From Asterias rubens (Eukaryota), in NCBI RefSeq assembly GCF_902459465.1, contig NC_047082.1:10292001-10356000 (forward strand): 64,000 nucleotides of DNA, given 5' to 3'. Shown here in pieces: positions 48,201-52,646 of this stretch. Made by a program: the position numbers and the translations under genes. How positions within the stretch are numbered: position 1 is the stretch's first letter; every line of letters begins with the position of its first letter. Under the pieces are notes generated by a model that saw only the letters and a list, made by a program, of their open reading frames with translations, searched no databases and was not told the origin of the DNA.

Positions 48201-48779
48201 TTCCAGGTTGGATTAATGACACACTTCTTGGTGATGACTAGTCACTAGTGCAGGCATTTTTGTCAGTCCCCGCAAACCTGGATTGTTGATATAATCCTTT
48301 TGTCCTCAGTCGTGTACTACTTTGTTTTCTCTTTTACTGCCCCACAACCCCAAATTTCCCCGCTATTCCTGTGAAATACGCTTGGCATAAGCACAGAATT
48401 CCCTGCTTCCGTGGCGTAAGCGCCGAATCTGTGCTTACGGTAAGCGGAGCCATGAACTACGGCCCTGATCTGGATGTTAAATTTTTAAACAATTAATACA
48501 AAATATGGATAACTTTCCGTATGGCGCCACCACTTTTTCACTCATTTTTACAAAAAGGGATAAATCAATCAGGTAAATTAGATACTATATTATTTTATTT
48601 TGAATGAAAAAGTGGTGGCGCCATACGGAAGATTACCCTTTTCGTTTACTGAACGGTTGTTTACCAAATGCCAAACAACTGCCACTCACTCAATGACTGA
48701 CATTAATTAAAAAACAATGGCACAGGAGAAGGGAAAAGACCAAGGACGAAATAGATGACATTTACTTACTTCGAACCAT
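39228..48779 (-). CDS. DNAAF11: Dynein axonemal assembly factor 11 (LRRC6/tilB), 15 exons, 468 aa
   Basis: Exons 48779-48770, 48056-47963, 47276-47203, 46711-46634, 45781-45685, 44978-44903, 44524-44414, 43525-43425, 43060-42983, 42554-42462, 42247-42167, 41805-41670, 40609-40514, 39968-39862 and 39402-39228 total 1407 nt in phase. Motifs include [70 protein letters not shown] and the ending DDPDVPPLI*. Confidence 0.96.
40165..40505. mobile_element. Kolobok-type MITE (family A)
   Basis: AGCCATTGGACAC...GTGTATAATGGCT, with TTAA at 40161-40164 and 40506-40509. Confidence 0.85.
40642..41026. mobile_element. Kolobok-type MITE (family B)
   Basis: AGGCAGTTGATACTATTGG...CCAATAATGTCCACTGCCT, with TTAA on both sides. 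A partial copy lies at about 41150-41308. Confidence 0.85.
41873..41926. repeat. (TTTG)n/(TTGC) microsatellite
   Basis: Direct inspection. Confidence 0.95.
42251..42286. repeat. (GAAA)n microsatellite abutting a DNAAF11 acceptor
   Basis: Reads (TTTC)n on the coding strand immediately before AAG|G at 42247. Confidence 0.95.
42655..42791. repeat. 43-bp direct repeat with a 94-bp period
   Basis: CACAG(T/G)TAACCCTCC(A/T)ACTGTATG(T/A)CCAATTAATACCATTCAC occurs twice. Confidence 0.75.
42790..42882 (-). mobile_element. SINE head fragment (another at about 47400-47470 on +)
   Basis: Reverse complement of GTGGCATGTCTTGGCCGAGC...CTCTGGTGTTTCTGATCAG...GGGTTCGAGTCC. Confidence 0.65.
44130..44218. repeat. 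(TCAA)n microsatellite
   Basis: Direct inspection. Confidence 0.95.
44229..44377. mobile_element. Short MITE
   Basis: TGCGTTTTGACGACCCCAACCAAAAACTGT and ACAGTTTTTTGGTTGGGGTCGCCAAAACGCA. Confidence 0.7.
44588..44831. mobile_element. MITE with GC-rich interior
   Basis: AGACTTGTGAACAAGTCGTTA and TAACGACTTTTCCACAAGTCT (2 mismatches). Confidence 0.6.
45945..46345 (+). mobile_element. 5'-truncated SINE interrupted by a hairpin/MITE-end insert (45994-46111)
   Basis: Colinear with 50526-50867 on both sides of the insert. Confidence 0.75.
46354..46592. mobile_element. PIF/Harbinger-type MITE with long arms
   Basis: CAG|GGCCTAATTTCATAGAGCTGC...GCAGCTCTATGAAATTGGGCC|CTG. Confidence 0.75.
46792..47158. 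mobile_element. Kolobok-type MITE
   Basis: Perfect 13-bp TIR AGGGAAGGTACAC, with TTAA at 46788-46791 and 47159-47162. Confidence 0.85.
48507..48638. mobile_element. 130-bp hairpin MITE in DNAAF11 intron 1
   Basis: TIR GGATAACTTTCCGTATGGCGCCACCACTTTTTCA. An inverted near-identical copy lies at 61544-61679. Confidence 0.8.
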
Positions 48780-49149
48780 TTTTCTGCCCAAAATTATGTT
48801 GATCTTTTGAGAAAACTCTGTTAAACTACTGTTAAACCGAAAAAAGGAAAACTTCAAGAAAAATGCAACAGTCCGCCAGCTGATGTTTACAGTTTTGCTC
48901 GGCAGCAGAATCAAGAATTAGCGCCACCAATAGTTCCACTTTACTTAGTTTTAACTAAGTAATTTTTTTTATCTCCGTCTGTTTTATGTATCTTTTGAAT
49001 TGTTTAACGCAGTAGTGTGCTACTTTTTGTGTGCTTTGGCTTTCCATACTTTGTCTGGCGTCCATATACACTTGTGAGAAAGCTATTGGTTTTAAAAAGG
49101 TAACCAGTCTAAACATTCCTTGTAAACTTGTAAACACGATGACACCAAA
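48780..49149. promoter_or_regulatory. Compact bidirectional promoter shared by DNAAF11 and the Mab-21-like gene, with forkhead-type motifs
   Basis: The start codons diverge 371 bp apart. TGTTTAC at 48884-48890 and tandem GTAAAC motifs at about 49121-49137. A weak X-box-like GCTGCCGAGCAAA lies on the minus strand near 48893-48905. Confidence 0.6.
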
Positions 49150-52100: not shown

Positions 52101-52646
52101 TTGATCTTTTAATTATTATTTTGTTTTTCACTTCTGAATAGTCCAAAGGGACGAGAAGATTCTCGCAAGATGTGGTGTAGCTGTTTCTACCCAGGTGAGA
52201 TTCTCCTTGCATCCCAAGCGGACATCGGTAGCTCTACCCAGACTTGCCGTCGACATGCCTTAAATGCCCTCCTAGCTGTTTGTGAAGAAAACCGAGAGGA
52301 CTTCAGTCCGGTCGGCGCCCGCATCATCCGCACTGTGTTCCTCCATCAGTGCGTGCAGTATCCACAAGATGAAGACTGGGAACCAGGCAAGCTGGGTCGT
52401 GCCTTTGTGGATTTATTCCTGGCTCTTATCCAAGCCCTCCTGAAGGGGACCATTGCGCATTTTTTCCTGCCGGAGACGAACCTTCTGGCAGCTCACGATA
52501 AAAGAGATCTTAAGCCTGTGGCTGATCATCTTAAAGCGATTCTCAATGATATTGTACAGCATCCGGAGAAAACCTACTTTTTAGGAGACAGAAATGGACG
52601 AAAGCAATACACAAGGTTAAAAACTACATGTGCTCCGAAGTTCTAG
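49150..52646 (+). CDS. Divergent Mab-21/cGAS-fold family protein (MAB21L-like), 4 exons, about 417 aa, probably catalytically degenerate
   Basis: Exons 49150-49581, 50260-50398, 51336-51513 and 52142-52646 join in phase (0/1/2) to 1254 nt. Blocks ILHLVCEQDDRF, HRFDILVPL, VDDG, LLLPGKVLRRFHRLVQEAV, GPAVTL...IVSLIPAV...WP, CRRHAL and YPQDEDW...HFFLPETNLL parallel MAB21L1 as recalled. The exon 1 and exon 2 donors were chosen by phase fit. Confidence 0.8.
49586..49599. promoter_or_regulatory. RFX X-box overlapping the intron-1 donor of the Mab-21-like gene, about 0.8 kb upstream of the DNAAF11 ATG
   Basis: GTTGCCATGGTTAC, a near-perfect X-box. Confidence 0.5.
50526..50867 (+). mobile_element. 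Full-length tRNA-derived SINE, second body type
   Basis: A box CGGCCGAGTGG, B box GTTCGAATCC, core CACCCAGGGGTATAAATGGGTACC, tail GCGCTATATAAGA plus (TTA)n. Confidence 0.85.

What the first reader, a model, noticed from the sequence alone, without database searches (positions are those of the whole stretch)
48770..52646. Catalytically degenerate Mab-21/cGAS-fold gene head-to-head with dynein assembly factor DNAAF11 and carrying RFX motifs
Seen: the two ATGs are 371 bp apart, with forkhead motifs between them. An X-box overlaps the intron-1 donor (49586-49599), and three GTTGCTATGG half-sites cluster in intron 3 (51743-51785). The four exons build a Mab-21-fold protein. Established: cGAS uses E225/D227/D319 after a GS motif, MAB21L1 has E/E/Q at these positions, and RFX and FoxJ1 drive motile-cilia genes. 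By my manual alignment the residues here are R/D/S (HRFDIL, IVSLIP) with no GS motif. There is also a roughly 17-aa insertion after VDDG. Inference: this is a nucleotide-binding pseudo-enzyme co-regulated with the ciliary programme, a role I do not know for this family.
Basis: partly seen in the sequence, partly recalled or inferred. Interest (0 to 1): 0.72.

Follow-up and report, generated by a model that had tools for sequence, protein, structure and literature searches.

The report
Dead cGAS-like gene beside DNAAF11
A starfish gene for a cGAS/Mab-21-shaped protein that has lost its enzyme residues sits back-to-back with the cilia gene DNAAF11 and carries a deeply conserved binding site for the cilia regulator RFX. 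This hints at, but does not prove, a role in ciliated cells.

Summary
The gene is real. Four GT-AG exons (49150-49581, 50260-50398, 51336-51513, 52142-52646) encode 417 aa, and spliced RNA contigs from four runs reproduce them exactly. It is a Mab-21/cGLR-fold protein. The AF2 model of the Patiria orthologue has pLDDT 88.6 and TM about 0.8 to Sp-cGLR1, MAB21L1 and cGAS.

It belongs to a single-copy clade found only in echinoderms and hemichordates. Three alignment methods place R74/D76/S208 at the cGAS E225/D227/D319 positions and S61-D62 at the GS motif. The clade has also lost the WRxSFS and SYHxKT nucleotide-contact motifs. So "pseudo-enzyme" holds, but "nucleotide-binding" is unsupported. 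dN/dS of 0.07-0.15 shows the protein is still functional.

The head-to-head pairing with DNAAF11 is real, with the two transcription starts about 250 bp apart, but it occurs only in starfish.

The X-box at intron-1 positions +5 to +18 is conserved in three starfish despite saturated synonymous sites. It is the only strict X-box in each locus. A crinoid orthologue that does not neighbour DNAAF11 has an X-box 119 bp upstream of its ATG.

The intron-3 "half-site cluster" is a dispersed minisatellite, and the forkhead motifs are weak evidence. Whether the X-box drives this gene, DNAAF11 or both is untested. MAB21L3 already links the family to multiciliated-cell fate.

The parts
49150..49581 (+). 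Mab-21-fold gene, exon 1 (aa 1-144). Carries S61-D62 at the GS position and R74/D76 at the cGAS E225/D227 positions. RNA contigs begin at 49145.
   Evidence: (table 8)
49586..49599 (-). RFX X-box GTAACCATGGCAAC (minus-strand reading), at intron-1 positions +5 to +18. Conserved in Acanthaster and Patiria.
50260..50398 (+). Exon 2 (aa 145-190)
51336..51513 (+). Exon 3 (aa 191-249). Carries S208 at the cGAS D319 position.
52142..52646 (+). Exon 4 (aa 250-417 plus stop), the Mab-21_C helical domain. Has C262/C264 and R310 in place of the WRxSFS and SYH nucleotide-contact motifs. The 3' UTR runs to at least 52713.
48770..48900 (-). DNAAF11 exon 1 (5' UTR plus ATG at 48779), spliced to exon 2
   Evidence: table 8: 48770-48873, -48886 and -48900 joined to 47963-48056
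47963..48056 (-). DNAAF11 exon 2 (begins ...[14 protein letters not shown]...)
48919..48933 (+). 15-mer TAGCGCCACCAATAG in the shared promoter, identical in all three starfish. Binding factor unknown.
49111..49119 (+). 9-mer AAACATTCC about 40 bp upstream of the Mab-21 ATG, conserved in three starfish. Could be a FOX-like, TEAD-like or core-promoter element.
51743..51790 (+). Three GTTGCTATGG copies. They are units of a dispersed 23-bp minisatellite, not a conserved RFX cluster.

Best explanation
Shown: this is an expressed four-exon starfish gene for a 417-aa protein with the bilobed cGAS/Mab-21 fold. It belongs to a single-copy clade restricted to echinoderms and hemichordates. The clade lacks the GS loop. 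In starfish only one of the three metal-binding acidic residues remains (R74/D76/S208). The clade has also replaced the conserved nucleotide-contact motifs. The protein is under strong purifying selection.

Inferred from that: it works as a non-catalytic scaffold or ligand-binding protein, not as a cyclic-nucleotide synthase.

Shown: in the starfish lineage the gene moved from its ancestral NIF/POLRMT neighbourhood to lie head-to-head with DNAAF11, with transcription starts about 250 bp apart. It also has a starfish-specific intron 1 whose first 18 bases contain a strongly conserved RFX X-box.

Inferred: RFX binds this site. Through the shared bidirectional promoter it switches on both DNAAF11 and the Mab-21 gene in cells that build motile cilia.
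For: Gene model and transcription:
- (table 8) establish the exons and their splicing in RNA.

Fold and family:
- Pfam Mab-21_C matches at E 1.8e-17.
- The AF2 model has pLDDT 88.6 and pTM 0.87.
- Foldseek TM scores are 0.80 to Sp-cGLR1 and 0.75-0.80 to MAB21L1; most cGAS entries score 0.69-0.80.
- The clade profile hits 8gjy at 3.4e-39, MAB21L1 at 1.8e-20 and cGAS at 1.5e-14.
- The clade has 100/100 tree support. Orthologues exist in all five echinoderm classes and in an acorn worm.

Loss of the active site:
-.

Selection:
- dN/dS is 0.07-0.15 with dS of 0.9-2.8.

Synteny:
- Starfish have the order Tektin / DNAAF11 / Mab-21 / B4GALT.
- Other classes have NIF / Mab-21 / POLRMT or no called neighbour within 10 kb.

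X-box:
- 17 of 18 intron bases are identical in three species, while the rest of the intron cannot be aligned and the other two donors show no such conservation.
- The single variable base falls at a degenerate consensus position (C or T).
- It is the only strict X-box in each roughly 22-kb locus.
- The crinoid orthologue has GTAGCCATAGGAAC 119 bp upstream of its ATG, without DNAAF11 next door.

Co-occurrence of transcripts:
- Both transcripts appear in runs X1, X3 and X4.
Against: - I have no tissue- or cell-type-resolved expression and no RFX occupancy data.
- DNAAF11/LRRC6 is itself an established RFX target: its promoter is bound by RFX1/2/3 and its expression falls in Rfx2 and Rfx3 knock-outs (PMC7498320). 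The X-box may serve DNAAF11 alone.
- The brittle-star and acorn-worm orthologues have no X-box within 800 bp of the ATG. The sea urchin has only a half-site. The sea cucumber has one only 7.7 kb upstream.
- An X-box about 440 bp downstream of one start and about 700 bp upstream of the other is further from a start site than is typical for RFX targets.
- Loss of catalysis is inferred from sequence, not assayed. The crinoid member still has E/D/D.
Confidence: 0.55

Rival explanations
1. The X-box is DNAAF11's own enhancer and merely happens to lie in the neighbour's first intron. The Mab-21 gene is a bystander with a function unrelated to cilia. Any co-expression is a by-product of the shared promoter.
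For: - LRRC6/DNAAF11 is a documented RFX and Fox target (PMC7498320, PMC4168999).
- No other strict X-box lies near the DNAAF11 start in any of the three starfish loci.
- Both the adjacency and the intron-1 X-box are starfish-only.
Against: - The site is tied to the Mab-21 splice donor at a fixed distance from the Mab-21 ATG (+421 to +436). Its distance to the DNAAF11 ATG varies from 668 to 967 bp.
- The crinoid orthologue has an X-box at -119 without DNAAF11 nearby.
Confidence: 0.3
2. The conserved 14-mer is not an RFX site. It would instead be a splicing or other RNA-level element of intron 1.
For: It abuts the donor (GTAG then GTTGCC...), and it occurs only where intron 1 exists.
Against: - Conservation extends to intron position +18, well beyond what I understand of U1/U6 contacts.
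- The sequence is a near-perfect palindromic X-box, and its only variation is at a degenerate X-box position.
- Donors 2 and 3 show no comparable conservation.
- A zero-loop palindrome cannot form an RNA hairpin.
Confidence: 0.1
3. The protein is still an active cGLR-type immune nucleotidyltransferase that uses a non-canonical active site.
For: - The best sequence and structure match is the active enzyme Sp-cGLR1.
- D76 is invariant across the clade.
- The crinoid member keeps E/D/D.
Against: - The GS motif, two of the three acidic residues, and the WRxSFS and SYH motifs are all lost.
- The first and third triad positions vary freely across the clade: R, T, D or E at the first, and S, H, D or E at the third.
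- No STING ligand-binding-domain match was found in this genome. This is a weak negative.
Confidence: 0.05

Closest known systems
Sp-cGLR1 (Stylophora pistillata cGAS-like receptor 1, PDB 8gjy) and animal cGLRs in general
   Same: - Best sequence match (3.4e-39 with the clade profile).
- Best fold match (TM 0.80).
- Same bilobed NTase core plus C-terminal helix bundle.
   Different: - Lacks the defining active-site motif h[QT]GS...[DE]h[DE]h...h[DE]h (PMC9980059), with SD, R.D and S at those positions.
- Lacks the WRxSFS and SYH motifs.
- Has an extra conserved segment (DSxxCDNPY..PLPGFGY and CFWE.EPT) of about 20-29 aa.
MAB21L1/MAB21L2
   Same: - Mab-21 fold with TM 0.75-0.80.
- No demonstrated enzyme activity and an incomplete triad (E/E/Q; PMC4897736).
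   Different: - Not orthologous. This genome has its own MAB21L1/2-like single-exon gene on C8, and the lamprey MAB21L2 falls outside the clade.
- MAB21L1 keeps the base-stacking Tyr (Y272; PMC4897736), whereas this clade has Arg there.
MAB21L3
   Same: A Mab-21 family member without a functional active site that is tied to the multiciliated-cell programme. It acts upstream of mcidas (Takahashi 2015, as cited in PMC4897736 and PMC5364628).
   Different: - It acts in cell-fate specification in vertebrates.
- No orthology is shown. The fold match ranks below cGLR1 and MAB21L1/2.
- I could not place MAB21L3 sequences in the tree.
RFX/Fox-controlled dynein-assembly genes (LRRC6/tilB, HEATR2, DNAAF1)
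   Same: A conserved palindromic X-box close to the start of the gene, and the neighbour gene is LRRC6/DNAAF11 itself (PMC4168999, PMC7498320).
   Different: - The X-box is intronic, at about +440, rather than within about 200 bp upstream.
- Fox motifs are not positionally conserved.
- No expression or binding data exist.

Membership tests
Pfam Mab-21 family (PF03281 NTase domain + PF20266 Mab-21_C) | Significant match to the C-terminal HhH/H2TH-like domain | tested here: met
   Exon 4 matches PF20266 at E 1.8e-17, 63.8 bits, against a cut-off of 24.1.
Pfam Mab-21 family (PF03281 NTase domain + PF20266 Mab-21_C) | Match to the N-terminal NTase domain | tested here: met
   - Exons 2 and 3 match consecutive parts of PF03281 (positions 68-106 and 109-162) at E 0.019 and 0.0096. 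Each is below the cut-off on its own.
- The full-length orthologues carry precomputed PF03281 hits.
- The spliced window protein could not be submitted whole.
cGLR (cGAS-like receptor) enzymes, criteria of PMC9980059 | Active-site motif h[QT]GS[X8-20][DE]h[DE]h[X50-90]h[DE]h | tested here: not met
   The window protein has S61-D62, R74-F-D76 and S208 at these positions. Three alignment methods agree.
cGLR (cGAS-like receptor) enzymes, criteria of PMC9980059 | Homology across both the NTase core and the C-terminal helix bundle | tested here: met
   hhalign against vertebrate cGAS gives probability 99.5 and E 1.4e-22 over 315 columns. The profile against 8gjy covers both lobes.
cGLR (cGAS-like receptor) enzymes, criteria of PMC9980059 | Predicted structural homology to known cGLRs | tested here: met
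   The AF2 model of the Patiria orthologue (71% identical to the window protein) has TM 0.80 to 8gjy, and most cGAS entries score 0.69-0.80.
MAB21L1/2 orthologue group | Groups with MAB21L1/2 in a tree and is the genome's single-exon MAB21L1/2 copy | tested here: not met
   - It forms a separate clade with 100/100 support.
- A distinct MAB21L1/2-like single-exon ORF lies on C8.
MAB21L3 orthologue group | Groups with vertebrate MAB21L3 | not tested
   No MAB21L3 sequence was available by reference for the tree. Foldseek ranks MAB21L3 below cGLR1 and MAB21L1/2.
RFX target genes | X-box matching the consensus near the gene start | tested here: met
   GTAACCATGGCAAC fits both GTNRCCNNRGYAAC and GTHNYYATRRNAAC. 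The window has 3 matches to the first pattern against 0.22 expected by shuffling.
RFX target genes | Evolutionary conservation of the X-box | tested here: met
   It is identical, apart from one C/T change, in three starfish with dS of 0.9-2.8 and otherwise unalignable introns. It is not present in the same place outside starfish.
RFX target genes | RFX occupancy and RFX-dependent expression | not testable with these tools
   No ChIP, knock-down or tissue-resolved RNA data could be reached. The RNA runs were assembled contigs with coded samples.
Bidirectional-promoter gene pair | Divergent transcription starts less than 1 kb apart | tested here: met
   DNAAF11 contigs reach 48873-48900 on the minus strand, and Mab-21 contigs start at 49145-49146 on the plus strand (table 8). 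Contig ends only approximate true start sites.

The most novel reading that the evidence does not exclude
This clade of echinoderm and acorn-worm Mab-21 pseudo-enzymes is a genuine, previously unrecognised component of the RFX-driven motile-cilia programme. It could be a cofactor in dynein-arm pre-assembly alongside DNAAF11, or a regulator of ciliated-cell fate analogous to MAB21L3. Starfish would then have fixed that link by fusing its promoter with DNAAF11's.
Probability: 0.25. Interest if true: 0.7.

Novelty: new member of a known kind. Interest (0 to 1): 0.45.

Why it matters
Catalytically dead Mab-21-fold proteins (MAB21L1/2/3, MiD49/51) are common, but their molecular functions are mostly unknown. 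This work defines an uncharacterised, strongly constrained clade covering all five echinoderm classes and an acorn worm. The clade has a remodelled pocket and a conserved clade-specific insert.

The work also yields a testable regulatory hypothesis: a deeply conserved intronic X-box in a roughly 250-bp bidirectional promoter shared with a dynein-assembly gene. If this gene proves to be part of the cilia programme, it would join MAB21L3 as a second link between the cGAS/Mab-21 fold and motile ciliogenesis. It would also give a tractable starfish or sea-urchin model for studying what such pseudo-enzymes do.

The starfish genome also appears to lack any Mab-21-family gene with a complete cGLR active site. 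That bears on how echinoderms sense cytosolic nucleic acids.

Tried and rejected
- **Intron-3 half-site cluster as RFX evidence: rejected.** The 23-bp unit recurs in tandem arrays on other chromosomes and is absent from the orthologous introns.
- **Forkhead motifs as evidence: weak.** There are two strict cores against about 0.15 expected, and they are not positionally conserved.
- **The conserved 15-mer TAGCGCCACCAATAG as a cilia or RFX partner motif: rejected.** Its 16 other genomic copies show no X-box enrichment, with 2 sites against 2.5 expected. It matches only half of the CTCF consensus as I recall it, so the factor is unknown.
- **The X-box-like GTTTCCATGGTAAC at 43001: rejected.** It lies in a DNAAF11 coding exon and is not conserved.
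- **PDB search with exon 1 alone:** nothing significant.
- **Earlier findings of this scan:** none for this place or these words.
- **Literature:** no paper was found on this clade, on cGLRs in echinoderms, or on Mab-21 with RFX.
- **Spliced window protein:** I did not submit it to search or fold tools because it has no reference. The Patiria orthologue P0080 (71% identical, same key residues) stood in for it.
- **DNAAF11 loci of non-starfish echinoderms:** could not be fetched because no protein id was available for DNAAF11. So I could not test whether DNAAF11 carries its own X-box there.
- **Complex prediction of Mab-21 with DNAAF11:** not run, because adjacency alone is not sufficient reason.
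Full report
**What is in the sequence.**
- On the plus strand an ATG at 49150 opens a four-exon gene: 49150-49581, 50260-50398, 51336-51513 and 52142-52646. All introns are GT-AG, and the spliced frame is open for 417 codons.
- On the minus strand ATGGTTCGAA followed by GTAAGT starts at 48779. 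It splices to 48056-47963, giving [17 protein letters not shown]..., the N-terminus of DNAAF11/LRRC6.
- The orthologous neighbour in two other starfish carries Pfam LRR_9 plus CS_DNAAF11_C.

**Transcription.**
- Assembled RNA contigs from four public runs, carrying two organism labels, were laid on 47100-52900 (table 8).
- Single contigs join 49145-49581, 50260-5039x, 5133x-5151x and 5214x-52713. These are exactly the predicted exons. There is no depth in intron 1 apart from repeats.
- Other contigs join 48770-48873 (or to 48886 or 48900) to 47963-48056 on the minus strand, which is DNAAF11 exons 1 and 2.
- The two transcription units therefore start about 245-270 bp apart, a true bidirectional promoter. 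Contig ends only approximate start sites.
- Contig depths cannot rank expression, and the samples are coded, so no tissue information was obtained.

**What the protein is.**
- Exon 4 is a Mab-21_C domain (E 1.8e-17). Exons 2 and 3 match consecutive parts of the Mab-21 NTase model weakly.
- The closest solved relatives by sequence are the coral enzyme Sp-cGLR1 (8gjy), then cGAS and MAB21L1.
- A search of 1.84 billion cluster representatives found a small group of close relatives. With two word-index searches and cluster look-ups, these are orthologues from:
  - Acanthaster and Patiria (starfish, 66% and 71% identity);
  - Amphiura (brittle star);
  - Diadema (sea urchin);
  - Holothuria (sea cucumber);
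  - Antedon (crinoid);
  - Ptychodera (acorn worm).
- In a maximum-likelihood tree this clade has 100/100 support (Diadema and Holothuria were found later and are not in the tree). It is sister (97/95) to a small group of mollusc, brachiopod and acorn-worm proteins. It is separate from vertebrate cGAS, from hemichordate cGLR1-like proteins and from lamprey MAB21L2.
- AlphaFold2 on the Patiria orthologue with a 39-sequence alignment gave pLDDT 88.6 and pTM 0.87.
- Foldseek finds Sp-cGLR1 (TM 0.80) and MAB21L1 (0.75-0.80); most cGAS entries score 0.69-0.80. The fold assignment is secure.

**Active site.** Three independent alignments agree: MAFFT over 39 family members, the clade profile against PDB sequences, and hhalign of the clade against a vertebrate cGAS profile (probability 99.5, E 1.4e-22).

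| cGAS position | Window protein |
|---|---|
| G212-S213 | S61-D62 |
| E225 | R74 |
| D227 | D76 |
| D319 | S208 |

- Across the clade the middle Asp is invariant, while the first and third positions drift.

| Lineage | Triad |
|---|---|
| Crinoid | E-D-D |
| Sea cucumber | E-D-H |
| Sea urchin | R-D-D and R-D-E |
| Acorn worm | D-D-H |
| Brittle star | T-D-S |
| Starfish | R-D-S |

- No member has GS.
- Two motifs are nearly universal in cGAS, cGLRs and the sister group but are replaced throughout this clade. WRxSFS..EK became WCxC[FL]Y..E. SSYHxKT became xRIIRT.
- The second motif contains the Tyr that stacks on the donor base: Y436 in human cGAS and Y272 in MAB21L1 (PMC4897736). Here that position is Arg (R310).
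- So the protein fails the defining cGLR criterion (PMC9980059). It has also lost the residues one would need to call it nucleotide-binding at the canonical pocket.
- It is not decaying. dN/dS among the three starfish is 0.07-0.15 in both halves of the protein.
- Clade-specific motifs are invariant: DDRF, DS..C.NPY..PLPGFG[YF] and CFWE.EPT.
- The clade has a net 20-29 extra residues between strand beta2 and the long helix. Their exact position depends on the aligner.

**The rest of the family in this genome.**
- The assembly is 417.6 Mb, and the window is C22:10292001-10356000. It has only four Mab-21_C loci:
  - a single-exon MAB21L1/2-like gene (E/E);
  - a GS-bearing gene with D/N/E;
  - a MiD49/51-like gene with an N-terminal membrane segment;
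  - this gene.
- None has a complete cGLR motif.
- No STING ligand-binding-domain match was found. That is a weak negative, because the search works exon by exon.

**Synteny.**
- Acanthaster and Patiria share the order Tektin (+), DNAAF11 (-), Mab-21 (+), B4GALT-like (+).
- The window also has Tektin exon 1 at 33351.
- Outside starfish the gene is not next to DNAAF11. Antedon has a NIF gene upstream. Diadema and Holothuria have POLRMT downstream, and Holothuria also has NIF upstream. Amphiura has a kinase gene upstream, and Ptychodera has no called neighbour within 10 kb.
- The head-to-head pair is therefore a starfish innovation.
- Intron 2 is shared by all orthologues examined. Intron 3 is shared with the brittle star.
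- Intron 1 exists only in starfish. It sits where starfish proteins are 12-14 residues shorter than the other orthologues.

**The X-box.**
- GTTGCCATGGTTAC (49586-49599) reads GTAACCATGGCAAC on the minus strand. This fits both the strict vertebrate-type consensus and the nematode-type consensus, as I recall the latter.
- At the same intron position, +5 to +18, Acanthaster has GTTGCTATGGTTAC and Patiria has GTTGCCATGGTTAC. The intron diverges completely from position +19 onward.
- The donors of introns 2 and 3 share nothing beyond GT.
- Synonymous sites between these species are at or near saturation (dS 0.9-2.8), so this is a clear phylogenetic footprint.
- The single difference is C versus T at a degenerate consensus position. 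In a read-through frame it would be non-synonymous (His to Tyr).
- It is the only strict X-box in each 22-kb locus.
- A k-mer screen of the promoter and intron 1 found only two other three-species footprints. These are TAGCGCCACCAATAG (48919) and AAACATTCC (49111, about 40 bp upstream of the ATG).

**Which gene does the X-box serve?**
- For DNAAF11:
  - LRRC6 is a bona fide RFX target in mouse ependymal cells (PMC7498320), and its fly orthologue tilB has Fox and Rfx motifs (PMC4168999).
  - No other X-box lies near the starfish DNAAF11 start.
  - The site exists only where the two genes are neighbours.
- For the Mab-21 gene:
  - The site is inside it, at a fixed +421 to +436 from its ATG. The distance to the DNAAF11 ATG varies from 668 to 967 bp.
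  - In the crinoid, where DNAAF11 is not adjacent, GTAGCCATAGGAAC lies 119 bp upstream of the ATG. From shuffled-sequence rates I estimate roughly a 0.2% chance of this in one 250-bp promoter, or under 1% after testing several species.
  - The sea urchin has only a half-site (GGTAGCCATGA) next to TGTAAACAA at about -48.
  - The sea cucumber has a strict X-box only 7.7 kb upstream. The brittle star and acorn worm have none within 800 bp.
- I conclude that the site is very probably a real RFX element (about 0.8). Through a 250-bp bidirectional promoter it probably affects both genes. Whether the Mab-21 gene is a true member of the cilia programme is about even odds.

**Parts of the finding that do not hold.**
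- The three GTTGCTATGG copies in intron 3 are units of a 23-bp repeat. It occurs in tandem arrays on C13, C18 and elsewhere. They are not found in the orthologous introns.
- Forkhead cores between the ATGs are only modestly enriched and are not positionally conserved. Each starfish does have some RYAAAYA-type site within about 40 bp of the conserved 15-mer.
- The statement that a cilia-related role is unknown for this family needs qualifying. MAB21L3 acts upstream of mcidas in multiciliated-cell specification (Takahashi 2015, as cited in PMC4897736 and PMC5364628).

**Verdict.**
- This is a real, expressed and strongly constrained gene. It is a new, taxon-restricted member of the non-catalytic branch of the cGAS/Mab-21 fold.
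- It has a well-supported regulatory footprint that ties it physically to DNAAF11 in starfish.
- The pseudo-enzyme call is solid. The nucleotide-binding call is not supported. The cilia link is a good, testable hypothesis rather than a result.

Noticed in passing
window 48919-48933; L001 9680-9694; L002 9906-9920 and 9947-9961; L022 about 9852-9866: The 15-mer TAGCGCCACCAATAG in the shared promoter is identical in three starfish. It has 17 copies genome-wide against 0 for the reversed control, all with unique flanks. A similar TAGCGCCGCCAC sits 30 bp upstream of the crinoid X-box. The binding factor is unknown, and it is not enriched near X-boxes.
   Followed up: partly
window 49111-49119; L001 9958; L002 9979: AAACATTCC is conserved 39-55 bp upstream of the Mab-21 ATG in three starfish, about 30 bp upstream of where the RNA contigs begin. 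It may be a core-promoter, FOX-like or TEAD-like element.
   Followed up: no
window 29722-29985, 33351-33800, about 41000-48900: The window holds a run of cilia or flagellum genes: an ORF with the PGPGSY motif typical of sperm-tail PG-rich repeat proteins, Tektin exon 1, and DNAAF11. Tektin next to DNAAF11 is conserved in Acanthaster and Patiria.
   Followed up: partly
window 4010-4023: A perfectly palindromic X-box GTTACCATGGTAAC lies about 1.5 kb upstream of an exon encoding an IBR/RBR-type zinc-finger motif (5556-5780). The gene it belongs to was not worked out.
   Followed up: no
window 49582 (intron 1) compared with L003, L004, L022, L026, L027: Intron 1 is present only in starfish. It coincides with a 12-14-residue deletion relative to the other orthologues, whose sequence continues ...DDV... 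at that point. This is compatible with part of the coding sequence having become intron.
   Followed up: partly
G000 C8:15313471, C11:12547832, C7:17237937 (L023-L025): The genome has only four Mab-21_C loci and none with a complete cGLR active-site motif. No STING ligand-binding-domain match was found. Both are lower-bound searches.
   Followed up: partly
window 48507-48638, 50941-51064, 51550-51695, 49816-50203: Short inverted-repeat (MITE-like) elements and other highly repeated segments fill DNAAF11 intron 1 and Mab-21 introns 1-3, with summed contig depth in the thousands to a million. Long poly-G tracts lie at about 49755 and about 50160.
   Followed up: no
L026, L027, L022: The probable ancestral echinoderm neighbourhood of this gene is a NIF-domain phosphatase gene upstream and mitochondrial RNA polymerase (POLRMT) downstream.
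   Followed up: partly
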